DNA of 64,000 nucleotides from Macrostomum lignano (Eukaryota), in NCBI GenBank assembly GCA_002269645.1, contig NIVC01001274.1:62001-126000 (forward strand), in the 5' to 3' direction. A program made the position numbers and the translations under genes. Shown one piece after another: positions 429 through 61,704 of this stretch; position 1 is the stretch's first letter, and every line of letters starts with the position of its first letter. The notes below the pieces were generated by a model. That model ran no database searches and was not told the origin of the DNA. It was given only the letters and a program-made list of their open reading frames with translations.

Positions 429-864
429 TGGCTGTTTCAAACGAAAGCTAATATCAGTTTAAACTCTCCCATTACAAGCTCGTATTAGCAGGGAACAAAC
501 GTTTTAGTCGCGACAGCCCCTGGATTGCCAGTTTTCTGCTAAAATTAAACCTTTAGACCAAAGTGAAACGAGGCACCTGACTGAATCACTTCCGAGTTAT
601 TTGCAAAATTTCACTAGCGTCATTGTTTGCTCAGTTATATGAGTCAAGCACTGAAGTCAAATTATCCAACCCCAGTTTATCTTAATTTGACAAATTCCCA
701 AGCCTAAAAAGCATTTTAGCCAAGCTCTAGGGCAAATATGTTTTGGTTAATTTATCAAATAAACAATCTTACCAAATGGAATATTGTCTAGAAAATAGAA
801 TAAGAGATTGAAACGGACAGACACCAACTTAACAGTTTAATGCAAACCAGATACGGTCCCGGGT

Positions 865-1154
865 GCACGCGAAGGCGTATTCAGCATGCCAGTGAAGTAT
901 GAGACAGACTAGGCCCATGGGCTAAGGTCTGCGATGCTTCACGCCTGCCCCCATCTTCAGCAGGTCAAGGCTGGTGGGAGGTCTGCACCCTCTATTTGCC
1001 TCTGGCAGCCGCAGACCCCCCCCACGCTGTCTCGCAAGTCGACCCAGGGTACTCGTCCCCGCGTGTGTTCAAGGCAGTCCCTAGGGCTGCTGGACAGACT
1101 GGGCTCCGGCGCTGGCGACCCTATCCAGTGGCTTCGGCCGAATTTGGGTATGCG
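865..1154 (+). ncRNA. HDV-like self-cleaving ribozyme (predicted) at the LINE 5' end
   Basis: P1 GCACGCG 865-871 / CGCGTGT 1060-1066 with G865.U1066; P2 ACCCA 1042-1046 / TGGGT 1145-1149; P3 GGG 1047-1049 / CCC 1057-1059; L3 TACTCGT; P1.1 AC 1051-1052 / GT 1067-1068; J4/2 C1139-GAA. Folded by hand. Confidence 0.7.
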
Positions 1155-1381
1155 GGTCTGGCTCGCCAACCTGCAGGCCGTGGTACTGCTCAACGTACTC
1201 TCTAATGCCTAAGGTGTTGACCGTGCCGATGGGCTGGAAGGCCGGGGAGTAGTCCGGTCGCAAGCGGTCCCCCTCCTGGTGTCGGGCCAGCCTTGAGGGT
1301 GCTATTGGCCTACTGCCCGGTCAGGTGGAGCGGCCGGGTGGGTACCGCGCCCCTTTGAGGGTAGCCCACCAACCTTTTATC

Positions 1382-2887
1382 ATGGCCTTCGAGCCGACTA
1401 TGGATAAACAAGCTATTTCTAGGGACGGGGACCCTTCTAAACCCCAACCTCAGTCCGAAGGACCGGCCGGCCCTGCTGGCAGATCCCAACCGACTGATTC
1501 AACTGTGGCAAAGGAAGGACCGGCTGGCTCTGCTGGCAGATCCGACCAGAGCTACCAAACTCAAAATACCCTAAGACCTGCCAGCTCCGCTGGTGGATCT
1601 AAGGGAACCGCGAGCTCTGAGCCTAAAGGACCGGCCAAATCTGGCAGATCCGATGAAGCTCAGCGGGCTCGGCTTGAGCGCAAACGCGCTAAACAACGCG
1701 CCAAAAGGCAGGCCAAGAAGGGAGCTGCGGGGGCCAAAGCGGCGGCGTCCACCATGGATGCTGAAGCGACTGGAGTCCCAAGGCAACCAGGCGGGCCGGC
1801 CGGTGGAAGCTCCAGTAGTTCAGCGGCGGCGCTCCCTGGAGCTGCTGCCGCGGCTGCTGAGGCCGAAACCACGGCGCAACAAATGGCCACTGCCAACAAG
1901 GAGGTTCCTTCGGGAGCTACCTTTGCGGCGAAGGCCAAGGCCAAAATCCCGGGAGTGATCATCCAAGGTCGCGACCAGGACTGGACCACTGATCAGCTTC
2001 AAAAAGTGTGGAGTGCTGTTGACTCCTATCTGATTGAGCTGACTGTCGAGGAGGGAATCTCCATCGGCGTTGAGCGGATGGTGCTGCGAAGCACATTCGT
2101 TCTTATTGCTCCTAGCAGCGAGGAGGACGCTCGGCGGCTGCTCCAGCGGCTACCGACGGTCTCCTTGGATGCTGACCTTGGTGGAGCTCTTTTTCTTCGC
2201 GAGGGCCAGCGTCCAAAGACGATACCCTATGTGGTTTTCGTCCCTGCTAAGAGCACCGCAGCTGGACCAGACGTTATTCGCCGGGTCCTACTGCGTCTGA
2301 ACCCCGACCTCCCTGCTAGTGGACTGGTGTATCACCGCAAAGTCCGCAGGGGGGAGACGGGCAACTCAATTGTCCTCGGCCTTTCCAGCACTTGGGCGAG
2401 TCGGTACCCTAATGGATCCTCTTTCCAGCTGGGTGCCCTCAAGCTCAAGTTGCGCCGAGGAAAGTCTGCCAAAGGGAAGGCTACTGCCAACCCCGGCATC
2501 TCCGGCAAGAGCGGGGCGCAGTCTAAGGCCCAAGGAAAGGCGCAAGCCGATCCCAAAGCCAAAGCTGCATCTCGCCCCTCTGCTAGCAGCAGTTCGGCGA
2601 CCGCGGTAACGGCTCCGGCCGAGCCCCGGGAACCAAACCTGCCAGTCGGAGAAGGAGTTGAGGACGAGGCCGGGTCTTCGGAATCCGAGCTCTCCTCGGC
2701 CACCTTGGTGGGGTCTGAAGGTAAAGATGCAGGTGAGGAAGCTTCCTCCATCCTGTCATCGGAGCCTGAGGACTCTGCTGGGGGGGCCGGTGGGGGTGAG
2801 GAGGCCATGGACGTCGACCAACTCCCATCTCCCAGTCAAGCCCCAGCGGCCTGGGACGAGGACGATCTGTTGTCCAAGTCTCCTTGA
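1382..2887 (+). CDS. LINE ORF1 (basic/acidic low-complexity ends, central DUF4780-like domain)
   Basis: Open frame 1325..2887, first ATG at 1382; lies between the 5' UTR and the APE-RT ORF; no cysteine, so no CCHC knuckle. DUF4780 resemblance is from recall. Confidence 0.85.
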   Translation: MAFEPTMDKQAISRDGDPSKPQPQSEGPAGPAGRSQPTDSTVAKEGPAGSAGRSDQSYQTQNTLRPASSAGGSKGTASSEPKGPAKSGRSDEAQRARLERKRAKQRAKRQAKKGAAGAKAAASTMDAEATGVPRQPGGPAGGSSSSSAAALPGAAAAAAEAETTAQQMATANKEVPSGATFAAKAKAKIPGVIIQGRDQDWTTDQLQKVWSAVDSYLIELTVEEGISIGVERMVLRSTFVLIAPSSEEDARRLLQRLPTVSLDADLGGALFLREGQRPKTIPYVVFVPAKSTAAGPDVIRRVLLRLNPDLPASGLVYHRKVRRGETGNSIVLGLSSTWASRYPNGSSFQLGALKLKLRRGKSAKGKATANPGISGKSGAQSKAQGKAQADPKAKAASRPSASSSSATAVTAPAEPREPNLPVGEGVEDEAGSSESELSSATLVGSEGKDAGEEASSILSSEPEDSAGGAGGGEEAMDVDQLPSPSQAPAAWDEDDLLSKSP

Positions 2888-2926
2888 TGGCCCTGGGCTC
2901 TAGCCAGATATTGCATTTAATACAGT

Positions 2927-5900
2927 ATGACTAAGCTCCACGCTGCCAAAGGAGCGACATTCTGTCTGCAAATAAATTTACAGCATTGCGTATCTGCGTC
3001 AGTAAATCTGATGAAGATTGCTGAGCTGTACAGGCCAGGCCTCATCCTGATCCAGGAACCCTGGATGCGCAACGGTAAGTTGCCCAACATTCCCTCTGGC
3101 TACTCTGATTTTTATGTGTGTGGCCCGGGGAACAGCCGCCCTAGAGCGGCTATCCTCGCTGCTAGCCATCTCCAGGCTTGGCTGAGGACTGATCTCTCTG
3201 ATGGAGACCTTTGCGTCATCCAATCTAATCATTTCTCTCCGCGTACGTGTCTTGTTGCCTCGGTTTATATCCCAGGCGACAGAGACCCTGCTCCCGAGAG
3301 TTTACTGCGCCTTGCGCAGTACTGCGAGTCCCAGAACGCTGAGCTGTGCTTAGGGGGCGACCTCAACGCGCACCACAAGCACTGGGGCAGCAAAGATACC
3401 AACACTAGAGGAGAGGAGCTTCTGGCCCTCATCTCTAACACAAACCTCATGCTCTGCAACCGCGGAGCACTCCTACCTTTAATAATGGCAGATGGACCGA
3501 GGTCCTCGACGCCACACTCGTTACCCCAAGACTCTTTGACAGAGTCAAGGAGTGGAGAGTCTGGTCTGAGGAGCCCTCCCTGTCTGACCACTGCTTTATC
3601 GCCTTTAATATCGCGGACACTAAAACCCAGTCTCCGATCACTTGGAGACGCAATATCCGCAACACTGATTGGGCGGCCTACAAGGCTGCCCTTGATCTGC
3701 ACCTGCAGGAACTCACGGACTTACGTCCGATTGAGACCTGCGAGGATGTGGATCATATGGCTGAGACGCTGACAGGTTGCATTATTGCAGCCTACGAAGC
3801 GGCTTGTCCTGCTCGCGCCTACAGAGGCAAGACCTCGGCGCCGTGGTGGAACCCGGAGCTGGGGAAACTCAGGCGGAAGGCCAAAAGCCTTCATCGCCGT
3901 GCCATGAAGACCGGAAACCCGGAGGACATGGAGCTTTTCCGGCAAGCCTCCCGCAATTTCAAATCTGAAGTGCGCAAGGCCAAGGAATGTAAGTGGCGCC
4001 AATTCTGCAATGAATTGGATCAAGACAGACCTACTTCTAGGCTTGTCAAGGCCCTTACAATGGACAAAATGTCCAAATTAGCCATGATCAAAAAAGATGA
4101 TGGCTCTCTTACTAAAGACCCTGAAGAAGTGCTTCAGCATATGCTTAGCACATTCTTCCCGAGGGTACCTACTGCTAGACCGGAGCCCAACCATTCGATG
4201 GATGGAGCCACCCTAGCGGCGGGCATTGTCACTGAAGACCTAATCGCTCGTGCGGTCAGAACCTTCAAACCCTTCAAATCTCCTGGACCTGATGGTATCT
4301 ACCCTGTTCTCCTTCGTGAAGCAGCCAAGATACCCTCGTTCCTGAGACTCACCCGCAATCTTATGCGGGCCTCTATCCAGCTGGGATACGTTCCCAAAAG
4401 CTGGACTGAAGCTCGAGTAGTCTTTATTCCCAAACCTGGGAAGGGTGACTACCAAAGCGTCAAGGCCTTCCGGCCAATTAGCTTAACGTCAGCAATGCTT
4501 AAGCTCACTGAGAGGCTTATTCTCTGGCGGCTGCTCTCCTGCGAGCTGACAGCGATGCCCCTCAGCAATAATCAGCACGCCTTCCGTACCGGGAGGTCGA
4601 CTGACAGCGCCCTGCATGCGATTGTCGAAAAGATTGAACGGGCGGTACTGGGTGACGGTTACGCCCTGGCTCTCTTTCTTGACATTGTTGGCGCCTTCGA
4701 CAACGTTATCTTTGAAGCGTTTCAGAGGGCCCTTCAAAATCGCAAAGCTCATGCTACCCTCATACGGTGGATCATGTACATGATCTCCAACCGTACGGTC
4801 ACTGCCCAACTTCTTGGGCAAACTGCCTCCACCAGAGTCTGTAAGGGTGGACCCCAAGGCGGAGTCCTCACCCCGACGCTCTGGAACCTGGTCATGGACG
4901 CTCTTCTGAGTGACTCCCGACCTGACCCCGTCTTCAAAGTCGGGTATGCTGATGACGTCACGGCCATTGTGGCAGGACCGTCTCCCAGCACGCTCAGGGA
5001 TCTGATGCAGAGCTTTATCCGCAAAGCAGAATCCTGGGCCAATGACAATGGTTTGGAACTCTCTGAGCCCAAAACCGTTGCCATTATGTTTACCAGCAGA
5101 CTACGCTGGAACATACGTCCTCTGCAGCTCTACGGCAGAGATATTGCCTTCGCGCACCAGACCAGATGTCTCGGGTCACACTTGACCACCGGCTCAACTG
5201 GTCCTTCCACGTGAAAGCAAAAGCTAAGCGTGCCTCAGCCATCCTGGCCCAGCTCCGACGAGCACTTGGCACTTCTTGGGGTCTATCCCCAAAGCGGCTT
5301 TGGTGGATCTATACTTCCGTAGTTAGACCTGCCATTACGTACGCCTCTGTTGTCTGGGTTAGCGCTACCCAGGTCAAAAGCCATGCAGACCTGCTCAACA
5401 CGATCCAAGGCAGAGCGTGTAGGCTCATCTGCAACGCCACCAGGTCCACGCCCTTTGCTGGCATGGGGGCCTTTCTTAATCTTCCGCCTCTTGACCTCTT
5501 CATCAGGGGTGAGGCGGCTAGAACGACGCGGCGTCTAATTGATGCCGGCGTCAAATTCATTTACATGAGAGCACCTGCTAAGCGGAACCTTGTCCCGCAT
5601 AGCGATCTGTGCCTCAACTTTCTCAACGAGTGTCAGGCCAATCGCGTCTTCACCGATGGCATTGCCTCAACGCTCAACCTGAGACAGCGCTACTCCGTAG
5701 CTATCGACTCGCGCGATAACATCAATGACCATTGGAACCCTGGTGAGCTTCATTGCTACACCGACGGTTCTAAGCAGTCAGCCAACACCGGCTTTGGTGT
5801 TGGAATCTTTCTGAACGGGAGGGTCATCGCTACCCACGCTCAATACACTGGGGTCAACTCCAGTGTTTTCCAAAATGAAGTTCTGGCCATCAGCTCCTGC

Positions 5901-6665
5901 ACTGCAGAGCTTCTCGCCACTGGCGTTACTGGTAAGAACATCATTTTCCATTCGGACAGCCAAGCTGCCTTGCACGCCATCAGTGGCTGCAGCACCAACT
6001 CTGCTACAGTCCTTGACTGTATCAAACTCCTCAATGTGTTGGGTTCCGCCAACAAAATTACCCTTAAGTGGGTTCCGGGGCATGTGGGGATCCGAGGAAA
6101 TGAGTTGGCTGACACCCTTGCAAAAGTTGGTGCCTCCGGCTCCTCTCTCGGCCCCGAACCTCTTGTCCCGATTCCTGGCTGTGTCATCGACTCGCGCATC
6201 AAAGCGTGGATCAGGACTCAGCACCGCTCGACTTGGGCGAACCGCACGAACTGCAGGCAATCCAGAGGCGCTGTCCCTCAGCCCTCTCACCAGCTCCGGA
6301 AGCTCCTCTTGCGCCTCTCGCGCAGAGACATCCGGGCTGCCACCATGACCCTCTCTGGTCACGGCTGCTTCTCCAGGCACCAGTACCTGCAGGGCAACGC
6401 CACCAACGCCACCTGTAGTTTCTGCAACTCAGGTGACGAAACCGCTGAGCATTTCGTCAGCATCTGTCCCGCCTTCACGCGGGCCAGACTCACTTACCTC
6501 GGGCCACACACATCTATTACTGAAGCGTGCAAACCCGAAAACTTTAATCAGCTCATGCGCTACCTTCGGGCCACCCGCAGGGCTGAACTCTCCTTTCCAG
6601 AGAGCACCATAGCTGCTGGCGACACTGGGGAACCTCCCTGGGCGGCGCCAACCCTCCGTCCATAG
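2927..6665 (+). CDS. LINE ORF2: APE endonuclease, reverse transcriptase, RNase H, CCHC finger; two single-base frameshifts
   Basis: APE (LQINLQH, IQEPW, GGDLNAHH, SDH in shifted frame), RT (PGPDGI, FRPISL, GGPQGGVLTPTLW, YADD), RNase H (YTDGS, SDSQAAL, WVPGHVGIRGNELAD), CSFC-x8-H-x4-C. Frames join at about 3464 and 5173. Confidence 0.93.
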
Positions 6666-6683
6666 CGACGCGTCGGCCGTTCA

Positions 6684-6725
6684 GGGACTAGCGGAATGGG
6701 CGCCCGCGCCTTCCCGCTGTGTCCC
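6684..6725 (+). other. LINE 3' UTR stem-loop
   Basis: GGGAC 6684-6688 / GTCCC 6721-6725; TAGCGG 6689-6694 / CCGCTG 6714-6719; GGCG 6699-6702 / CGCC 6707-6710; homologous motif on the minus strand at 60567-60635. Confidence 0.6.
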
Positions 6726-6935
6726 CTCCGGGACAGCCCTGCAGCTAAGTCAAAGTCACGGTCCCGGGTTTTAACTGCTCTTGTGCCAGAACACTTTATA
6801 TTTTTGCCTCATAAAAACTACAAATAAGGATTATATCGTTATTACTATAGCTTATCGTTAATCAAGTTTTGTTTTGATTTCTTGATTCAAAAGTTCTTCA
6901 AATCGAATCTCGTCTGATCACGACAATCTTCGCAT

Positions 6936-8440
6936 TCACTGGCAGGTGCCAGCAGCCAGCAGTCGCAGCGTCACCCATCCGTGTTCGCCAGCCGAGTTGC
7001 CTCCCGTGACGCCGGCGCAGTCGCTGCCGTTGCAGAACGAGCCGCCGCCGCCTCCGGCTTGATTGCGGCCCACACCGGCTCCGCCTCCGCTGAAGCCGCC
7101 GCCAGCTCCGGCAGCGCCCGGGGAGGTAGCGTTGCCGCCTCCGCCGCCGCCTCCACCGAAGCCGCCGTCGCCGGTGCCGCTCTCTCCGGCGCTGCCGCCG
7201 GCCCAGCCGTCGGCCAGACCGCCGCCTCTCTCGCCGTCGCAGGAGCATCGCCTTGGATTGACGGCCCTGCCAAGCCAGCCGGCGCCGCAGCCGCCGTGGC
7301 ACAGCAGTTCTTTAGTTTTGTTTGGTTCGTTGAAACCAGGCTGACCATTGATTCCTCCCAGTCCACTTTTGAGGATGTGATTACCATTCGAATCCGTACC
7401 ATTTTGGTCCCTTTTGCCGGAAACACCTGTAAAAATGTTTTATAAAAGTAGTCTGCATGAACAAGTAAAAATAGAGGCACGCTATTTTCAATTTTGTTAT
7501 CAATTAAAAACCCACCGTTTTTGCAACAGGAGCAGCCGCCGCCGCCACCAGCCGCAATCAGCAGCTGCTGATCCGCAGTCCGGTACACGAAGCTGCCTCC
7601 GCCGCCGCCAGCTCCCGATGTGTTCAAGTTAGCAGAGCCGCCCGCCTGCCCGACCACGATAGAGAGCTGAGTGCCGGCTGTCAGGTTGAAGCTGCCAGCT
7701 GTGACGGCGCCGAAACCTCCAAGACCCCCAGTGAACGGGTTGTCGCCGCCTTTGGCTCCGGCAACCACGATGCGGTAGCAGCCGGTGACGTTAATCAGAG
7801 CGAGCTGGATTGAGCCATTCTTGCCTGAGCTGCTGTCTGCGAAGTTCAGGTTCGATATTTGCTCGCTCATAGGATAAAAGCTGCCTTTAATTAAAACTAT
7901 AAGAACTCGAAAGTATCCAGCGATAGGGATTTGGATAGTCGTAGAAAACTTGAAACTTCACAAAGTATCTTCAGCAAATTTTGAACAGCTTTTCAGCAGA
8001 AGGTCTCAATAGTGCTTACTCAGAAAGGTTTGCTTCGAGTTCCTCGCAATTGTAGCAGCAAAGTCCTCAGCGACCCAGACTCTGTCTCCAGTTTCCGCTC
8101 CGAGATGCCGACTTACGTGAGCTCCTGGAGGTGCCGCAGACATCAGAGAGTCGAAGACGATGACAATTCGACAGATTTGCATCACCTTGTTGAGCACTGC
8201 CAGAACACAACGCTTTGCTTGGCACAGAGCCACGCACTCAATGCTGCTTGAAACTTCAGTCACGTTCGCGACGTCACTTTTGATGCTTGAGTTGAGCAGC
8301 ATGACTTCTGTTGAGGCGATGACGCGACCGACCTTCTGCTGGGATTCTTTGCCGGCTGTGACTGTGGAGCAGCAGTTCATGTGTGCTCTGATTTGAACAC
8401 TACTGTGTTTTGATGCTGGTTCGATTAATAAATTTGTCAC
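6936..8440 (-). CDS. PAN/apple-like plus ALK/LTK-type glycine-rich domain protein; exons 8440?-8020, 7884-7516, 7426-6936
   Basis: Two GT-AG introns (8019-7885, 7515-7427), both phase 1, join the frames. VSSSIECVALCQAKRC...ICRI (PAN-like); YRIVVAGAKGG, LSIVVGQAGG, GGGGGSFV, LLIAAGGGGG, GGFGGGGG, GGGFSGG, GGGGSFC (glycine-rich domain). Start codon uncertain. Confidence 0.8.
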
Positions 8441-13019: not shown

Positions 13020-14580
13020 TCACTCCTCAGTAACCGTTGGTAGGTGCAGTACAAATGACCGCATGTTGACACTCTCGCATTTTGTCAAATCTCTGTCAGT
13101 CATTTTCAGCCAAGGCCGGCACCCAGGCTGAGCACTGTCAGTCTCGTACGTCACTTTCGGAGCAAAGTAAGCAGACGGCATCACGCAGACCCGCGTTGAC
13201 GGCCCGCCGTCTTTGAAGCTGTGCAGCGTTCGATCAACAACGCGAGCCAGCAGTCGCGGATCGGCCACGGAGACGATGCCAGCCGGCGCTGCCTGACGCT
13301 GCCAGACGATGTCGTGCATCAGCTTGAGCAGCCGCAGCCACAGCTGATGTCCCGGCTTGCTGAACAGGAAGCTGATCGCAATATTGCCATCAGCTTTTGC
13401 TGTGGCACTCAAAGCAACTCCACAGTCAGTGAGCAGGTGCTCGAAGCTTCTCAGGCACCGACTGTCCAGATCGGCGTACACCCCGCCGTGAACGTACATG
13501 TACAGGTAGCGGGACGCAACCAGACGCTCTTGAAGAGTTGCCAACCGACTGTAGGTGGACTTAAACCAGGGTGCCAAGTCTCGAACCAGACGTTCGTTGT
13601 CCTTCTCAGTCCAGAGTCGATGGCGCCAGCCGTGCATGCAGGACTGCCAACTGAGCTGCCAACTCGCTTTGAGTTGCTTCGACTGTTGAGCCATCGCTGA
13701 TGCACCCGATGGCAAAGTAACCGACTCCAGCTGCTGGTGAACTGTGCGCCAGTTCCTTGTAATTCGGTTCCACTTGTTAGCTGAGGGTAGTTGGGCCTTT
13801 TTTCCAAATCGGTTTTTCAGCTGCTGCTCAACTTTCGCTGCTTCAGGAATATCCTTGACGAAAAGGAAGTCGATGGTATTAAATTTTTCCTATGGTGCTT
13901 ACTCATAAGTAGTATAAAGCTCCTAAGTAAGTAGTATATTAAGTAGTATAGTCTAAAGAGATATTTTTGGGCTCTATTGTCATGTCCCTGGCTCCTGGCC
14001 CCTTTCGCTGGCCCCTGAAAAAGACAACACACCGCACAGAATGCATATCAGCCCTGACTTTGTCATTGTGGGTTTGGTCCAACTGGATTTTTCTCGCTAA
14101 TCAACGAAGGCACGCTATAGCTTGGTTTGCAGCTAGCATCGTAGTTTAGTATGCGCAGTGCAAACACACCCAATTCCCTGCCTCACATTCTGGGCATATA
14201 TGGACCAGCCAACATGATTATACGGTAGGCCTGGGTCTTTGAATGCACTTTCTATTCCTTAGGTACAAACCTTTATTTGCAGAGGCGCCGCAGGTCTCAT
14301 ATAGGCTCCAAGGTAATAGCACAGACCGACTACAATAGCTAGAAGAACTAGAATCCACATCGGCTGCAATGGATACAGTCTGGAGATCAGCTTTCGCTTC
14401 ATGATGCAGTACAATCGATTGGAAGTAGCGGTTGAACGGCGCAGCTGCGGGCTGCAGCGTAGACAGCTGGTTTTGAGCCGAATTTTGTTGCCAGAAGAAA
14501 CGACGCGACTTGTAGCTGGTTTCTGATGCTAATAAGGGAGACAGTTTAGAGTGCTGCCAGACTAAATAGAGTGCAAGCAT
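13020..14580 (-). CDS. GT32 DXD glycosyltransferase, SUR1/CSH1/OCH1-like; catalytic exon about 13889-13020, probable 5' exon 14580 to about 14270
   Basis: WRHRLWTEKD...PWFKSTY...RYLYMYVHGGVYADLDSRCLRSFEHLL fits the glycosyltransferase sugar-binding DXD region; frame open upstream to about 13889; hydrophobic start MLALYLVWQ at 14580. The 5' splice junction is not resolved. Confidence 0.75.
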
Positions 14581-17500: not shown

Positions 17501-17824
17501 TAAATGGAGTAATAGCCACTGTAGAGAAATACCTCGTCTCTACAGCATACACTCTTCACACCGTGGATGCGCCCTCATCCAGTCAAAGGCAGCACCGTCG
17601 CTCTCTTTCCGCCTCTCGCAGTGTTCCTACTTGAGCACAATTGGCACACAAAAGCGCTCAACCATATTGACTGTTCTCAAGACGATAGAAAATTAAGCGA
17701 AGAGAAGCTACAACAGAGCAAAGCCTGGAGTAGACGACTAAACAGTGAGCCATTAAATTGTCTACAGTTCGCAGTAAGCGAGTCAAAATTCGAAAGTTTT
17801 CAAAGACGATTTCGACTTTTCGAC

Positions 17825-20080
17825 ATGGCGACAACAATCAGCGTCCTGTCGAACTTCTCCAACTCTCGCTCGCCGGAGGAGTATCCAGTGGACGCGTCAA
17901 CAACTGCCAGTGACCTAGTGAAGGCGGTGCTAGCCAGGCACAGCATGCTGTCCAAGGACCCGCACCTGCTCTATGTGACGCTAGACACCCTCGGTCCGCG
18001 CGGTTTCGCCGAATCAGTTGAACTGGACGATACTTCCCGTCTATTGCAACGCCTCAGAACCGCGCGACTGACTTCCAAGCCATCGTTCAATCACGTGTTC
18101 GTCATGCACATGCGTTCAGGCGGGCTGCTGAAAATTCACGACTCGTGCATTATGCCCGGTAGCTTCTACAACTCGTTGTACGTCTCCATGGAAACAAAAA
18201 CTACTCAGGTGATAGCATTGTTATTAGCTTCGTATGGCTCGAAAGAGTTGGCTAGTAATTTTCAACTAGTTGCTAAGGACTCCAAAGGACGCGAGATTCG
18301 TCAACTGATGCCGGGCGAGTTTCCGTTGGCGGTGCAGCAGCAGCATCAGTCAAGAGCCGGGGGCGGAGAGCTCAGCATCCATTTGAAACGGGCTGGTAAA
18401 ATAGTTCGGTCGCCGACGTATCACGGACAGCCGAGTGGGCGAGAAGACTCTAACGGCCCAGATGGAGGAGGCGGCGGTGGCGACAACGGAGGCCGCAGCG
18501 GCAACGGCAGCGAAGTTCTGAGCCGTTCGGAAACCCTAGCCCGCTTACAGTCTAGCTTCAGAGAGCTGCAACGCCTGCGAGAGAAGAATCCCGACCTGTA
18601 CGACAAGCTGCTGGTGGCTGGACAACAATCCGACGGAAGCCAGACGGCACAGGCTGGCAAAACAAGCAGCAAGCAATCCGGCTCGAAGCAGACAGGAGCA
18701 GCAGCTCAGGCAAATCAGAAGCAGAAGTACGCAGTTGGTAGCAGCGGATTTCTATCAGCTCGTCAGCATTCCGTTCGGCTCGGATCTTCGTCCCGTCAGC
18801 GAATCACTGGCACCACTGGTGCAGCAGTCGGTCCTGCTACCGAGGCAACTACAGGCAGCTATTCAGCCAGAACAACGAAGAGCAGTCATGCGGACCGGCA
18901 GCGCAAGGAGAACTATACAGACTATTGGTTCACTGGCGGAACCGATTATCCAGAATTCGATCGTCATTATGAAGACGCAAACTTCCTTAATAGGCAGCTG
19001 AGACTGAATCGAAGTGCTCGAGGTGAACTGCAGCAACCACGGCAGCAGCTGATAGAGCAGATGAGACAACAGCAGCAGCAACAGCCAGCAGAGCAGGCAA
19101 AACCGCAAACGCAAAAGCAGCAGTCTTCAAAGAGGCAACTGCCGCAGGTGCCACAGCAGAGTGGCGACTCCGAGCTTCGAGTAAGGCGACTCAAGATGGA
19201 GCAGGCAGCTCAGCGCCAGCTTCTGCTGCCCTCTTCGAGCACTGGAGGCGGCGTTGACAAAGCAACGCATCGGAAGGACTTTCAATGTCAGACCAGCATT
19301 CCATCGGACGAGCCAATGCACCAACAGCAACAACAGAATTCCCATCAGCCGAGCCTTCGCGAGATACTGTCAGTCTGCGAGACTCACTCGTGTCAGCTTA
19401 CCCGAAGCTCGTTAGCTCAGCCCTGGGGCCTGCGCTGGCGAGAGGTTCAATTCGGCGACGTCAACGGTAACCATCGAGACGAAGCGTCGACGACAGGTCT
19501 GACCAAGCCCGCCATAGGTAGGCGTCAGGGCGCCTTTCAGCGTAACGAGCGTCTGTTAAAGTACATGCGAACTCTGGTTGCCATAGAGACTGCAGAGACT
19601 AAAGACGGAGTGAACAACCTCTCTGGCAACGGAGCCGACCTTCGATCCGGCGATCTTGTAATTGAGGTAAACGGTTGCCTAGCAACAGGTCTATCTCCCG
19701 AGCAGCTAGACAGCATCATAGACTCTCAATTGACTCTTGATCTATTGTTAGCCCGGCAACCGAGCAGCAGCGTTTCCATAGCAACTGGCGGTACAGCTGC
19801 AGAGCTCTCAGAGACCGAATCGGGTCTGTCCGACAGAGACGACAGCGAACAAGACTTGCGACTGCGACTGAGGCGCTTGCAGCTGCAGTGCAACGAGTTG
19901 GCTAGCCAGTGCCGCGTACACGAACTGGTAATCCAACGGTTGAGAAGCCAGCTGACCAAGACTGCCCGGGTTTGCCTGCTGCAGCACACCGAGGCCAGGC
20001 CAAGGAGCCACGCCGAGTCGGAGCGCTCGTTCCAGGTGATCAACGCTTCAAAAGAGTCTCCAGTTACTTCGGCAGTTTGA
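17825..20080 (+). CDS. Intronless protein with tandem Ras-association (RA) domains, polyQ linker, PDZ domain and C-terminal coiled coil
   Basis: Open frame 17567..20080, ATG at 17825; RA-like GGLLKIHDSCIMPGSFYNSLYVS...VIALLL...FQL; PDZ-like LTRSSLAQPWGLR...LRSGDLVIEVNG...LDLLLAR; heptad LRLRLRRLQLQCNEL. Confidence 0.75.
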   Translation: MATTISVLSNFSNSRSPEEYPVDASTTASDLVKAVLARHSMLSKDPHLLYVTLDTLGPRGFAESVELDDTSRLLQRLRTARLTSKPSFNHVFVMHMRSGGLLKIHDSCIMPGSFYNSLYVSMETKTTQVIALLLASYGSKELASNFQLVAKDSKGREIRQLMPGEFPLAVQQQHQSRAGGGELSIHLKRAGKIVRSPTYHGQPSGREDSNGPDGGGGGGDNGGRSGNGSEVLSRSETLARLQSSFRELQRLREKNPDLYDKLLVAGQQSDGSQTAQAGKTSSKQSGSKQTGAAAQANQKQKYAVGSSGFLSARQHSVRLGSSSRQRITGTTGAAVGPATEATTGSYSARTTKSSHADRQRKENYTDYWFTGGTDYPEFDRHYEDANFLNRQLRLNRSARGELQQPRQQLIEQMRQQQQQQPAEQAKPQTQKQQSSKRQLPQVPQQSGDSELRVRRLKMEQAAQRQLLLPSSSTGGGVDKATHRKDFQCQTSIPSDEPMHQQQQQNSHQPSLREILSVCETHSCQLTRSSLAQPWGLRWREVQFGDVNGNHRDEASTTGLTKPAIGRRQGAFQRNERLLKYMRTLVAIETAETKDGVNNLSGNGADLRSGDLVIEVNGCLATGLSPEQLDSIIDSQLTLDLLLARQPSSSVSIATGGTAAELSETESGLSDRDDSEQDLRLRLRRLQLQCNELASQCRVHELVIQRLRSQLTKTARVCLLQHTEARPRSHAESERSFQVINASKESPVTSAV

Positions 20081-38900: not shown

Positions 38901-40287
38901 CCTGTACATGCCGACTCTTGACGCACTCATACACACGCTCACACAGGGTGTACATGCCGACTCTTGACGCACTCATACACACGCTCACACAGGGTGTACA
39001 TGCCGACTCTTGACGCACTCATACACACGCTCACACAGGGTGTACATGCAGCGACCCTGGCATTCGCATCGTCTAGCATGTACACTTTCTGTGCCTTGGG
39101 GTTGGACCTCATGAGTGTAAATTGCACAGAAGCCTGACTTTGAACTCTTCGATCATATTTCTTCCAAATCATGGAATCCATGATCACGGAAACAGCTTAT
39201 ACAAAAAGTCCAATACTCACCTAGGATTAGCCAAGTTCAAGAAAGGCCAACTAACCACAAGATAGCCAACTACAGTAGCCACATACTTGGCTAGAATATT
39301 ATCCAGCAGACCAGTTTGGAAACGGAAATTGATGCACACACGAAGGTGATCAACCAACAGGCTGAATGCCTTCAACAGAGTACTCCGTTCGGCCGATTGG
39401 CCCCGATAGAATGCCACCTCCTCAGCTGCGGCAATCACGCGACTATTGACGTAGCGAAACTCGCCTTCAAGCTGCTGCTCTCGAACCGTCATCCGGCCCA
39501 ATGGACGGCGCAACCGTGTTAGCACTAGGCCAGTGAGCACTAAATAGCCAATCATACAAGCCGGAGCGTGGCCTCCAATAGTGCTAGTGAGCTTCAATGC
39601 GTAGATAACAATATCAAGAATAGGCTTGCTCAAGTTACTATAGAGATCTGCAACGCATTCGCACAGCTTGTCAACATCTTGAGCAATCAGCTGATCGGGA
39701 TTAGCAATACGGCTATCTAGATTGCCCAACTGATAATAGGTGAAGCCGCGCATCCACTTGTTAATTAGGTGAACAGTCAGTCGATGACGAAAGCGCAGCT
39801 TCACCTCCGATAGGCCCAACTTTAAAAAGTTATTAATAAGCGACATTGATGGCATCATTAGGATAAAACGAAATAGATAAGTTTTAAACAGAGACAAGCT
39901 CCGGCCAATAATGGCGCTCTCAATCATGGTACCATTGGCAATCATCCAAACATCAAGATAGGTCCTGGCCACTAGACAGGCAGCCACAAGCAGCAGGTAG
40001 AATGTTTCTGGGCTAAACAGCCGGGGTACAAGAATTTTCAATAGTCGACTGAGACGAGAGAAAAACTCTGCATCAACGTAGGCTTTGGCGGCTCGACCTT
40101 CAGATGCTTTGCGAGGATCGTTAGCTCCAGCTGCCAGGACGGCATCAAGTTCTTGCAAGCTCTTCTGGTTCCGCCTGCGCCTGCGAGCAGACAGGATCTG
40201 ATTGGCAAAGTACAGACCAATCATGCCTGTGCTGGCCAGAGCAGAAAATTGTGGCGAAAATAAATATTTACTGAGCGTAGCTGGCAT
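35983..40287 (-). CDS. ABCD3: Peroxisomal ABC half-transporter PMP70; exons 40287-39221, 38571-38273, 37190-36868, 36396-35983 (700 aa)
   Basis: [10 protein letters not shown] (EAA motif), RLAGFTARI, Walker [20 protein letters not shown], signature [17 protein letters not shown], Walker [12 protein letters not shown]; all three introns GT-AG with matching phases (2, 1, 0). Confidence 0.96.
37303..38243. repeat. 23-bp minisatellite (19-bp variants) filling ABCD3 intron 2, about 40 copies
   Basis: Unit AATCCTGACTCACTGTCTACCCC. Confidence 0.96.
38630..39048. repeat. 46-bp minisatellite in ABCD3 intron 1, about 9 copies
   Basis: Unit CCGACTCTTGACGCACTCATACACACGCTCACACAGGGTGTACATG. Confidence 0.96.
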
Positions 40288-60544: not shown

Positions 60545-61704
60545 TGACTTACTTGGCTTATATAGCTAGCTGCAGATTGGTCCGTAGACACAGCGGGGAG
60601 GCGAGGGTCGCCCATTCCGGTAGCCCCTGAAGGCCCGCAGACAGGCAGAGGCGTATGGGCCGGTCAGGGGGGGTCCGCCGGTCCGTCCTGCAGCGTGATC
60701 TTCCGTGGGGAAGAAACTGGCTCGTCTTGTCGCTCGAAGGAACTGGATGAGTCGTGAGATGCTGTCAGGCTGGCAGACCTCGTCAATGGACGGGTTCGGC
60801 CCGAGGTAGCGTAGCCGGTCTCTGGTAAAGAAAGGGCAGTGACAAACAAAGTGCTGAGCATCTTCATTGTCGTACTCGCAAAAGGGGCAAAGTTTAATCT
60901 CGAGGTCGCCTCGGAGGAAGCAGTTGCCTGGCGAGGTAGCCGAGGCCGGTGAGGGTCATGACAAGGGCTCAAATATCCTTCTGATTTTGCTTCAGAAGGA
61001 CGTTTCTGAGCCTGCGAGAGGGGCACGAGATTGTCGGCAGTTTTGGGTGCCCGCCCATTTGTCCCTGTGGAGGGAGTCAGCCCAGTCATCGATCTGACGA
61101 TTTATGACTGTCGAAGGCATAGGGACCAGGGGGGGGGGGGGCAGGGCCAAAGAAAGAGCCAGAGCCGCCCCTCTTGGCGAGGGTGTCTGCCAGCTTGTTC
61201 CCCGGAAAGCCTGTGTGCCATGGGATCCACTTCAGCCTGACAGTATTATATTGCTACTGGCCAGGAGGTGTGTGAGGGAGTTCGTTGTGGTGTGGCAAAG
61301 GGCCTGTAAGGCCGCTTGGCTGTCGGAGTGGATGACAATAGTCTTTCCTCTCGTAACCTTGGCGTTCAGCTCTGCAGCGCAGGAGCTGATGGTAAAGACT
61401 TCGTTCTGGAAGACTGTGGAGAGTCTGCCAGTGTGCATGACGCGGCCGTTGATGATGATGCAGACCCCAAAGCCGGCGCGGCCGTCTTTGATGGATCCGT
61501 CCGTGCAGCAATGGACCTCCTGGAAGTTCCAGTGGTCAGTGGCAGCATCCCTAGAGGGGATGGTGACCTTGTAGCGCTGAAAGAGGTTCAGAGTGCGGGA
61601 TTCACCGTCAGATAAGACTTGGAGCCCGCCGCCGTCTCTCAAGTCTTTGAGGCAAAGGTCAGTGTGAGGCAGGAGCTTGCACTTAGCGATGGCCCTGTCA
61701 GGCA
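60545..61704 (-). mobile_element. 5'-truncated degenerate LOA-clade LINE (RNase H to 3' end), a different family from 865-6757
   Basis: HCCTDGS, STVFQNEVFTISSC, IHSDSQAALQAL, LKWIP, ADTLAK, EDAQHFVCHCPFF, LRATRRA parallel ORF2 of the first element; homologous 3' UTR motif; frameshifts and deletions. Confidence 0.88.

What the first reader, a model, noticed from the sequence alone, without database searches (positions are those of the whole stretch)
865..1154. HDV-like ribozyme fold whose cleavage site is the first base of the LOA retrotransposon
Seen: the first 7 nt after the TSD (GCACGCG, 865-871) pair with CGCGTGT (1060-1066) ending in a G.U pair. That strand directly follows GGG-TACTCGT-CCC (P3/L3) and precedes GT, which pairs with the AC in L3 (P1.1 is AC/GU instead of the usual CC/GG). 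A branched P4 region ends in C1139-GAA, then P2 ACCCA/TGGGT. J1/2 is about 170 nt and holds a long hairpin (892-942). Established: HDV-like ribozymes process the 5' ends of R2, R4, R6, SART, RTE and Baggins (LOA clade) elements; the signature is G.U at +1, a 7-nt L3 and a catalytic C in J4/2, and R2 ribozymes carry large J1/2 inserts. Inference: this element cuts itself out of host co-transcripts, explaining the precise 5' end. Caveat: two extra U (1143-1144) lie between CGAA and P2; they would pair if the G run at 1047-1049 were under-called. I cannot tell whether this family is already described.
Basis: partly seen in the sequence, partly recalled or inferred. Interest (0 to 1): 0.85.

Follow-up and report, generated by a model that had tools for sequence, protein, structure and literature searches.

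The report
HDV-like ribozyme heading flatworm retrotransposon
The first ~285 bases of a 5.9-kb jumping gene (a non-LTR retrotransposon) in the flatworm Macrostomum lignano fold on paper into a well-known self-cutting RNA shape. The predicted cut falls exactly at the element's first base, so this is a good new example of a known trick rather than a new kind of thing.

Summary
The element is bounded by a perfect 12-bp target-site duplication (853-864 and 6758-6769), so G865 is its first base.

A strict HDV-like descriptor hits only this site in the window, on either strand. Anchored at base 1, the full match (core, 5-bp P2 and C-N-R-A) appeared in 0 of 200,000 dinucleotide shuffles. The core alone appeared in 30.

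The 170-nt J1/2 insert folds into a closed domain (z = -2.6). A closed P4 rod lies 1.2 kcal/mol above the local minimum-energy fold.

Limits:
- No Rfam model matches.
- I could reach no sister copies, so there is no covariation test.
- The nearest retrievable relatives (about 50% RT identity) have a different 5' UTR without this fold.
- The LOA label is consistent with a partial comparison to Baggins1 but is not established.

HDV-like ribozymes at non-LTR 5' ends are already known in R2, R4, Dong, baggins, RTE and L1Tc. This is therefore a new member of a known kind, of moderate interest.

The parts
853..864 (+). 5' copy of the target-site duplication, ACGGTCCCGGGT. The predicted scissile bond lies between T864 and G865.
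   Evidence: This 12-mer occurs only at 853 and 6758 in the window.
865..871 (+). P1 5' strand, GCACGCG. G865 is the first base of the element and forms the G.U pair with U1066.
872..1041 (+). J1/2 insert of 170 nt. It folds into a multi-branched domain closed by 875-877/1033-1035 and 882-885/1026-1029, and contains the hairpin 892-942. Linkers of 3 nt and 6 nt join it to P1 and P2.
   Evidence: -68.3 kcal/mol, z = -2.56, and 2 of 200 shuffles fold as well. The architecture matches the P1.2 'pinch' domain described in PMC4908430.
1042..1046 (+). P2 5' strand, ACCCA, lying flush against P3.
1047..1059 (+). P3 (GGG/CCC) enclosing the 7-nt L3, UACUCGU. U1050 and G1055 occupy the positions of the conserved L3 U and G. 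A1051 and C1052 form P1.1.
   Evidence: PMC3774820 section 12 describes the conserved L3 G pairing with an L3 U.
1060..1066 (+). P1 3' strand, CGCGUGU, directly following P3.
1067..1068 (+). P1.1 3' strand, GU. It pairs with C1052 and A1051.
1069..1137 (+). P4 region. It forms either one irregular rod closed by U1069.G1137 and C1070-G1136 (-21.2 kcal/mol), or two side-by-side hairpins at 1069-1094 and 1099-1137 (-22.4 kcal/mol).
1139..1144 (+). J4/2 in the favoured version: candidate catalytic C1139, then G-A-A, then two unpaired U. C1138 is a spacer or an alternative candidate.
1145..1149 (+). P2 3' strand in the favoured version, UGGGU (5 bp with 1042-1046).
1095..1103 (+). Alternative compact 3' half. 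C1095-A-G-A-C would be J4/2 directly after hairpin 1069-1094, and UGGG 1100-1103 would be a 4-bp P2 with 1043-1046.
1382..2887 (+). ORF1, 501 aa. It has no Pfam domain and no cysteine. Its central domain is weakly related to the ORF1 of relatives L001 and L002.
2927..6665 (+). ORF2, split across three reading frames. AP endonuclease lies in 2927-3772, reverse transcriptase in 3748-5214, and RNase H plus a C-terminal Cys/His motif in 5166-6665. There are two frameshifts, one in the 3748-3772 overlap and one near 5175-5184.
6666..6757 (+). 3' UTR. It has no poly(A) or microsatellite tail, and the element ends in ...AAGTCAAAGTC.
6758..6769 (+). 3' copy of the target-site duplication.

Best explanation
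Bases 865 to about 1149 encode an HDV-like (nested double-pseudoknot) self-cleaving ribozyme. It forms the 5' end of a 5.9-kb non-LTR retrotransposon of Macrostomum lignano with AP endonuclease, reverse transcriptase and RNase H domains.

Inferred mechanism: when the element is transcribed as part of a longer host or read-through transcript, the RNA folds in these steps.
1. P1 forms from the first 7 nt and 1060-1066.
2. P3/L3 and a two-pair P1.1 (C-G plus A-U) form the core.
3. P2 closes the second pseudoknot.
4. The structured 170-nt J1/2 domain holds P1 and P2 together.
5. A cytosine in J4/2 promotes attack of the 2'-OH of U864 on the 864/865 phosphate. C1139 is the most likely candidate and C1095 the alternative.

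The product is an element RNA that begins exactly at G865 with a 5'-OH. This would explain why the full-length copy starts precisely there. The sequence shows the fold and its position. Cleavage, the identity of the catalytic base and co-transcription are all inferred.
For: - Every helix sits at the stated coordinates in the canonical 5'-to-3' order P1-J1/2-P2-P3-L3-P3'-P1'-P1.1-P4-J4/2-P2'.
- It is the only strict-descriptor hit in the window on either strand.
- Anchored at the element's first base, 0 of 200,000 shuffles reach the full match and 30 of 200,000 reach the core.
- None of 102 environmental sequences with the identical core has the full set of features.
- The perfect 12-bp target-site duplication fixes G865 as base 1. 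A randomly 5'-truncated copy would not begin at P1.
- L3 carries a U at its first position and a G at its sixth, the pair described as conserved in HDV-like ribozymes.
- The J1/2 insert is significantly structured and closed near both ends. This is the arrangement shown to activate large HDV-like ribozymes.
- J1/2 length, P4 irregularity, 0-2 nt in J1/4 and a P2 of at least 5 bp all fall inside the range described for R2 ribozymes.
- A closed P4 rod that starts right after P1.1 and ends 1 nt before C1139 is only 1.2 kcal/mol above the local minimum-energy fold.
- 5' HDV-like ribozymes are established for R4, Dong, baggins, L1Tc and RTE.
Against: - No Rfam HDV-type model matches, at the gathering score or at E <= 10. 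This is expected given a 170-nt insert and unmodelled pseudoknots, but it is still a failed test.
- No covariation evidence exists. There is only one copy in the window, and I found none in the viral, metagenome or prokaryote collections or in the contig index.
- The nearest retrievable relatives, L001 and L002 (about 50% RT identity), have a different, covarying 5' UTR with no HDV fold.
- The nested part of the fold is predicted 13-17 kcal/mol less stable than the unconstrained fold. P2 recovers only about 4-6 kcal/mol of that by duplexfold, and tertiary contacts are not modelled.
- Two unpaired U lie between C-G-A-A and P2'.
- A G1130-G-C/UUCG/G-C-C1139 hairpin could sequester C1139.
- Upstream U864 and G863 could extend P1 by wobble pairs at the expense of P1.1. 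This effect is reported to reduce cleavage in the L1Tc and R2 ribozymes.
- This copy has two ORF2 frameshifts, so it may be a dead copy.
Confidence: 0.75

Rival explanations
1. The ribozyme and cleavage site are the same, but the 3' half is compact. Hairpin 1069-1094 would be a canonical P4 flush with P1.1. C1095 would be the catalytic base within a J4/2 of C-A-G-A-C. UGGG 1100-1103 would pair with CCCA 1043-1046 as a 4-bp P2. Bases 1104-1149 would then lie outside the ribozyme, and the C-G-A-A/UGGGU match would be fortuitous.
For: - The descriptor lists this P2 partner.
- Hairpin 1069-1094 is the most stable local element, and its closing pair U1069-A1094 abuts both P1.1 and C1095.
It is therefore no less unusual.
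- The nested-layer energy is slightly better, -109.5 versus -105.5 kcal/mol.
Against: - P2 has only 4 bp, while R2 ribozymes are described as having at least 5.
- There is an extra C before P2'.
Confidence: 0.2
2. The resemblance is chance, within a GC-rich, structured 5' UTR. The precise 5' end would be set by an internal promoter that initiates at base 1, or simply by complete reverse transcription. No self-cleavage would occur.
For: - No Rfam hit.
- No covariation evidence.
- Relatives at about 50% RT identity lack the fold.
- A permissive descriptor matches about 10% of shuffles.
- Chance core-plus-P1 matches are expected at roughly 2 per 128 kb by my own estimate.
- The HDV fold is not the predicted minimum-energy fold.
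Against: - A match of the observed quality, anchored at base 1, was never reached in 200,000 shuffles.
- It was not reached among 102 real sequences sharing the identical core.
- The coincidence with the boundary defined by the target-site duplication is independent of the fold itself.
- In L1Tc a promoter and a ribozyme coexist in the same 77 nt, so a promoter would not exclude a ribozyme (abstract of PMC3383444, listed).
Confidence: 0.12
3. The family has or had a working ribozyme, but this particular copy is a relic. Its ribozyme would be impaired, for example by the two extra U before P2' or by the flank extending P1. Alternatively these features could be insertion/deletion errors in the assembly.
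For: - ORF2 has two frameshifts even though the target-site duplication is perfect.
- UniRef M. lignano models carry ORF1 pieces at 87-98% identity, so other, diverged copies exist.
- The sow bug R2 is a described case of a dead element with an inactive ribozyme.
Against: Every core pairing is intact in this copy. A perfect 12/12 target-site duplication argues for a recent insertion. This reading is compatible with the best explanation rather than exclusive of it.
Confidence: 0.3

Closest known systems
R2 retrotransposon HDV-like ribozymes (Eickbush and Eickbush 2010; Eickbush et al. 2013, PMC3774820)
   Same: - Double-pseudoknot fold at the 5' end of a non-LTR element.
- P1 of 6-7 bp immediately after P3/L3.
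- Large J1/2 loops, with 23 to more than 700 nt between the P1 strands.
- A highly variable P4.
- Release of the element RNA from a co-transcript.
   Different: - R2 is a site-specific element with a restriction-like endonuclease, inserted in 28S rDNA.
- R2 often cleaves upstream, inside 28S sequence.
- This element has an AP endonuclease and RNase H and an ordinary 12-bp target-site duplication, and would cut at its own first base.
HDV-like ribozymes of baggins (LOA clade) and RTE elements (Ruminski et al. 2011, as summarised in PMC6765202 and PMC3774820)
   Same: AP-endonuclease-type non-LTR elements thought to lack their own promoter. Cleavage is at the element's 5' end. The window's RT C-terminal region is 31-32% identical to Baggins1 over 175 aa.
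   Different: I could not read the primary paper or its ribozyme sequences, so no structural comparison was made. The host here is a flatworm, not an insect. Membership of the LOA clade is not established.
L1TcRz, the HDV-like ribozyme in the first 77 nt of Trypanosoma cruzi L1Tc (PMC3185411)
   Same: - AP endonuclease-RT-RNase H element with target-site duplications of about 12 bp.
- Ribozyme starts at base +1.
- Cleavage is sensitive to upstream flanks that extend P1.
   Different: L1TcRz is compact (77 nt) with a one-pair P1.1, and it doubles as a promoter. This candidate is about 285 nt with a 170-nt J1/2 domain and a two-pair P1.1. Its RT is more distant from L1Tc, with only 53 aa aligning.
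drz-Agam-2 family ribozymes with a structured J1/2 (P1.2) domain (PMC4908430)
   Same: A stable, closed peripheral domain in J1/2 joined by short linkers. This arrangement 'pinches' P1 and P2 together and accelerates cleavage.
   Different: The Agam-2 ribozymes have a 12-bp P2, whereas P2 here is 4-5 bp. The J1/2 domain here is multi-branched rather than a single helix.

Membership tests
HDV-like self-cleaving ribozymes | Nested double-pseudoknot strand order: P1-J1/2-P2-P3-L3-P3'-P1'-P1.1'-P4-J4/2-P2' | tested here: met
   Read. It is the only strict-descriptor hit in the window.
HDV-like self-cleaving ribozymes | P1 of 6-7 bp without mismatches, with the cleavage site at its first nucleotide and a G.U pair at +1 | tested here: met
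   865-871 pairs with 1060-1066 as six Watson-Crick pairs plus G865.U1066. The literature range is given, and the mismatch intolerance.
HDV-like self-cleaving ribozymes | 3-bp P3 closing an L3 of about 7 nt that carries the conserved U...G pair, plus a P1.1 of 1-2 bp formed with the two nucleotides after P1' | tested here: met
   GGG/CCC closes UACUCGU, with U1050 and G1055 in the conserved positions. P1.1 is C1052-G1067 and A1051-U1068. The features are described.
HDV-like self-cleaving ribozymes | Catalytic C in J4/2, followed by a constrained A and then by P2' (P2 of at least 5 bp) | tested here: inconclusive
   There are two candidates. One is C1139-G-A-A + UU + UGGGU, giving a 5-bp P2. 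The other is C1095-A-G-A-C + UGGG, giving a 4-bp P2. They are about equally improbable by chance.
HDV-like self-cleaving ribozymes | Match to a curated covariance model (the Rfam HDV, CPEB3 or drz families) | tested here: not met
   No hit at the gathering score across the whole window, and none at E <= 10 on 700-1400. The 170-nt J1/2 insert and the unmodelled pseudoknots make a miss likely even for a true member.
HDV-like self-cleaving ribozymes | Compensatory base changes in P1, P2, P3 and P1.1 among homologues | not testable with these tools
   No second copy was found in the window or in any reachable collection.
HDV-like self-cleaving ribozymes | Mg2+-dependent site-specific self-scission that gives a 2',3'-cyclic phosphate and a 5'-OH | not testable with these tools
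   This needs an experiment.
LOA clade of non-LTR retrotransposons | ORF2 with AP endonuclease, reverse transcriptase and RNase H, plus a separate ORF1 | tested here: met
   Pfam matches Exo_endo_phos_2, RVT_1 and RNase_H. This architecture is shared with the I, Ingi and Tad clades and others, so it does not discriminate.
LOA clade of non-LTR retrotransposons | Reverse transcriptase groups with the LOA, Baggins, Bilbo and Lian elements in a phylogeny that includes all clades | tested here: inconclusive
   Only partial references were available, from Fig. S1 of PMC3774820. Baggins1 aligns at 31-32% over 175 aa (E = 3e-15), L1Tc over 53 aa only, and R2 not at all. No I, Jockey or R1 references were at hand.

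The most novel reading that the evidence does not exclude
The two mutually exclusive 3' halves are both real. One uses C1095 with UGGG 1100-1103, the other C1139 with UGGGU 1145-1149, and both pair with the same P2 5' strand. Together they would form a co-transcriptional switch. A compact ribozyme could fold and cut as soon as base 1103 is made. Transcribing further would shift the RNA into a second, longer form with a different rate, or into a form that serves in translation initiation or protein binding. This would be a regulated HDV-like ribozyme in a retrotransposon lineage where none has been described, namely flatworm AP-endonuclease-type LINEs.
Probability: 0.07. Interest if true: 0.6.

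Novelty: new member of a known kind. Interest (0 to 1): 0.35.

Why it matters
If it is active, this would extend 5'-terminal HDV-like ribozymes to an AP-endonuclease-type LINE of a free-living flatworm that is used as a laboratory model.

Full-text searches found no paper linking HDV-like ribozymes with Macrostomum. In the parasitic flatworm Schistosoma mansoni, non-LTR elements were only recently linked to a different ribozyme class, twister variants (abstract of PMC8501958, listed).

It would also explain how this family obtains a defined 5' end without its own promoter. It offers a natural example of a large, multi-branched J1/2 domain and of an A-U-containing P1.1. It would give annotators a marker for full-length copies.

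It does not change the general picture of how HDV-like ribozymes serve retrotransposons.

Tried and rejected
- **Rfam scans.** I scanned the window at the gathering score and 700-1400 at E <= 10. No HDV-type hit appeared. The weak sRNA and lncRNA hits are noise.
- **Sister copies.** Only one copy lies in the window. The contig look-up holds nothing for window ORF1, the window RNase H ORF or P0003. The family-specific 19-base core pattern is absent from the JGI metagenomes and the GTDB genomes. An ORF1-based locus search of the genome and viral collections found no relatives.
- **A wasted protein search.** A search with the ORF1 central domain returned nothing, even though P0002 and P0003 contain that region.
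- **More distant relatives.** L001-L006 were scanned with strict and loose descriptors. No HDV fold lies at their 5' ends. L003-L006 lack the 5' UTR or most of it.
- **Shorter core pattern.** A 16-base core pattern in the metagenome contigs, and a 15-base version in the viral contigs, returned only what look like chance matches. I used them as a false-positive control. One recurrent phage locus with a compact HDV-like layout lies inside an ORF and has no Rfam hit, so I set it aside.
- **Choosing between the two 3' halves.** Neither energies nor shuffles separate them.
- **Primary literature.** The primary paper on baggins and RTE ribozymes (Ruminski 2011) and Webb 2009 are not held.
- **Rejected reading.** I considered whether the L001/L002 5' UTR hides an HDV fold. 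The covarying 7-bp helix there encloses only about 16 nt, and I could find no P3 pairing or 7-nt L3 within them.

Full report
**What is at the coordinates**

- The first seven bases after the upstream repeat, G865-CACGCG-871, pair with C1060-GCGUGU-1066. That makes six Watson-Crick pairs plus G865.U1066.
- The 3' strand of this helix is immediately preceded by GGG (1047-1049), UACUCGU (1050-1056) and CCC (1057-1059).
- It is followed by G1067-U1068, which can pair with C1052 and A1051 in the loop.
- ACCCA (1042-1046) lies flush against the GGG and is complementary to UGGGU (1145-1149).
- UGGGU is preceded by C1139-G-A-A and two further U.

The stretch between the P1 5' strand and P2 is exactly 170 nt.

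**The element and its host**

The 12-mer ACGGTCCCGGGT occurs only at 853 and 6758 in the window (3' end read). The element is therefore 865-6757, and the base following each repeat copy differs. This fixes G865 as base 1.
- ORF1 (1382-2887) has no Pfam domain.
- ORF2 is split over three frames. They carry an AP endonuclease, a reverse transcriptase, and RNase H with a C-terminal Cys/His motif.
- There are two frameshifts, the second near 5175-5184.
- There is no poly(A) or microsatellite tail.

ORF1 is 87-98% identical to pieces of UniRef gene models from Macrostomum lignano. The window is therefore from that flatworm or a very close relative, and other diverged copies of the family exist.

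**Is it more than chance?**

A strict descriptor required:
- a 3-bp Watson-Crick P3;
- an L3 of 6-9 nt;
- a two-pair P1.1 with L3 positions 2-3;
- a 7-bp P1 with G.U at +1;
- a J1/2 of at most 300 nt.

It hits only this site in the whole window on both strands. By my own arithmetic, about two core-plus-P1 matches are expected per 128 kb. The fold alone is therefore not the argument. The argument is that it is anchored on the independently defined first base.

With P1 forced to start at base 1, 200,000 dinucleotide shuffles of 865-1424 gave these counts:

| Requirement | Shuffles matching |
|---|---|
| Core | 30 |
| Core plus a flush 5-bp P2 | 6 |
| Core plus P2 plus C-N-R-A within 3 nt of P2' | 0 |

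As an empirical control I took 102 distinct metagenomic or viral sequences carrying the identical GGGTACTCGTCCC-N6T-GT core. Four have a strict P1 partner within 320 nt, one of those also has a P2, and none has everything. A deliberately permissive descriptor matches about 10% of shuffles. Only the high quality of this match is informative.

**Peripheral parts**
- The J1/2 insert folds to -68.3 kcal/mol (z = -2.56). It is closed by helices near both ends, leaving 3-nt and 6-nt linkers. A stable, closed J1/2 domain with short linkers is what Webb et al. showed to 'pinch' P1 and P2 together and speed large HDV-like ribozymes by up to about 1000-fold.
- The P4 region (1069-1138) is not unusually stable (z = +1.9).
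- A single closed rod beginning right after P1.1 and ending one base before C1139 lies only 1.2 kcal/mol above the local minimum.
- R2 ribozymes are described as having 23 to more than 700 nt between the P1 strands, a highly variable P4, 0-2 nt in J1/4, and a P2 of at least 5 bp.

Hairpin 1069-1094 is flush with P1.1. It is followed directly by C1095-A-G-A-C and then UGGG (1100-1103), which pairs with CCCA 1043-1046. This gives a compact ribozyme with a canonical P4 but only a 4-bp P2.
- Layouts of this kind arise in 544 of 50,000 shuffles of the downstream region, against 747 of 50,000 for the C-N-R-A/UGGGU version.
- The nested-layer energies are -109.5 and -105.5 kcal/mol.

I cannot separate the two. 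I favour C1139 by roughly 60:25, because of its 5-bp P2, its C-G-A-A motif and the near-optimal closed P4.

**Evidence against**
- No Rfam family matches at the gathering score or at E <= 10.
- The pseudoknot-free part of the fold is 13-17 kcal/mol less stable than the unconstrained fold. P2 adds back only about 4-6 kcal/mol, and tertiary contacts are not modelled.
- Upstream U864 and G863 could extend P1 by wobble pairs and compete with P1.1. This effect reduces cleavage in the L1Tc and R2 ribozymes.
- A GGC-UUCG-GCC hairpin could sequester C1139.
- Most importantly, there is no covariation test, because no second copy could be reached.

**Relatives**

The closest retrievable relatives are metagenomic contigs with 46-51% RT identity.
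- L001 and L002 look nearly full length. Their ORF1 is weakly related to the window's (23% identity, E = 7e-7) and they carry (ATG)n tails.
- Their 5' UTRs align with each other and show covarying helices, but contain no HDV-like fold by strict or loose descriptors or by Rfam.
- L003-L006 lack the 5' UTR.

The ribozyme is therefore not a feature shared at that evolutionary depth, or 5' UTR modules have been exchanged.

**Clade**

Using the partial alignment in Fig. S1 of PMC3774820, the region after the YADD motif aligns to Baggins1 (LOA clade) over all 175 aa at 31-32% identity (E = 3e-15). It aligns to L1Tc over only 53 aa, and to R2 not at all. This is consistent with LOA. It is not a test against the I, Jockey or R1 clades, for which I had no references.

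**Comparison with what is known**

- Known cases are R2, R4, Dong, baggins, L1Tc and RTE.
- They are understood to release the element from co-transcripts and possibly to help translation.
- A planarian R2 was already folded into this structure.
- I found no paper combining HDV-like ribozymes with Macrostomum.

The finding is best filed as a new member of a known kind. It has two minor variations: an A-U pair in P1.1 and a multi-branched 170-nt J1/2 domain.

**Verdict**

My confidence that the family's 5' end encodes a genuine HDV-like ribozyme cutting at 864/865 is about 0.75. The identity of the catalytic cytosine, activity in this copy and the LOA label remain open. Interest is 0.35.

Noticed in passing
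window 60656-61696 (- strand): A fragment of a second, related non-LTR element. It is 43% identical at the amino-acid level to the RNase H/C-terminal part of ORF2, and only that part is detected. It is probably a 5'-truncated copy of another family.
   Followed up: partly
L001:81-330 and L002:72-320: These are metagenomic relatives at about 50% RT identity, from JGI samples 3300040778 and 3300040779. Both start with GGGG and share a structured 5' UTR with compensatory changes, for example CUGCACG/CGUGUAG versus CUGCAUG/CAUGCAG. Neither has an HDV-like fold or an Rfam hit. Their 3' ends carry (ATG)n tails, which the window element lacks. The function of this 5' module is unknown.
   Followed up: partly
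window 2927-6665: ORF2 carries two frameshifts, one in the 3748-3772 overlap and one near 5175-5184, although the target-site duplication is a perfect 12/12. Either a defective copy inserted recently, or the assembly has insertion/deletion errors. The second possibility also bears on the T run at 1143-1145.
   Followed up: no
P0001-P0004 (UniRef, Macrostomum lignano): Gene models named as UBC9, a GPCR, an endonuclease-domain protein and an RT/annexin-domain protein contain 87-98% identical pieces of this element's ORF1 or ORF2. They look like chimeric predictions that fuse transposon and host exons.
   Followed up: no
window 6971-7870 (-), 13020-13715 (-), 17567-20080 (+), 39217-40287 (-): Host-gene exons surround the element: a glycine-rich ALK/LTK-like domain, a DXD glycosyltransferase, an RA-domain protein and an ABCD-type ABC transporter membrane domain. 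The nearest one, at 6971-7870, is on the opposite strand. No obvious same-strand host transcript that could drive read-through was identified.
   Followed up: no
L016:4200-4270 (also L027, L028, L092, L127, L142): A recurrent phage or metagenome sequence has the same P3/L3/P1.1 letters, a 7-bp P1 partner immediately upstream and a 5-bp P2 partner 28 nt downstream. This is a compact HDV-like layout. However, it lies inside a 133-aa ORF on the other strand and has no Rfam hit, so it is probably chance.
   Followed up: partly
A protein search with the ORF1 central domain returned no hit, although P0002 and P0003 contain that region at 87-98% identity. The word index evidently misses some entries, so 'no hit' from that tool is weak evidence.
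   Followed up: no
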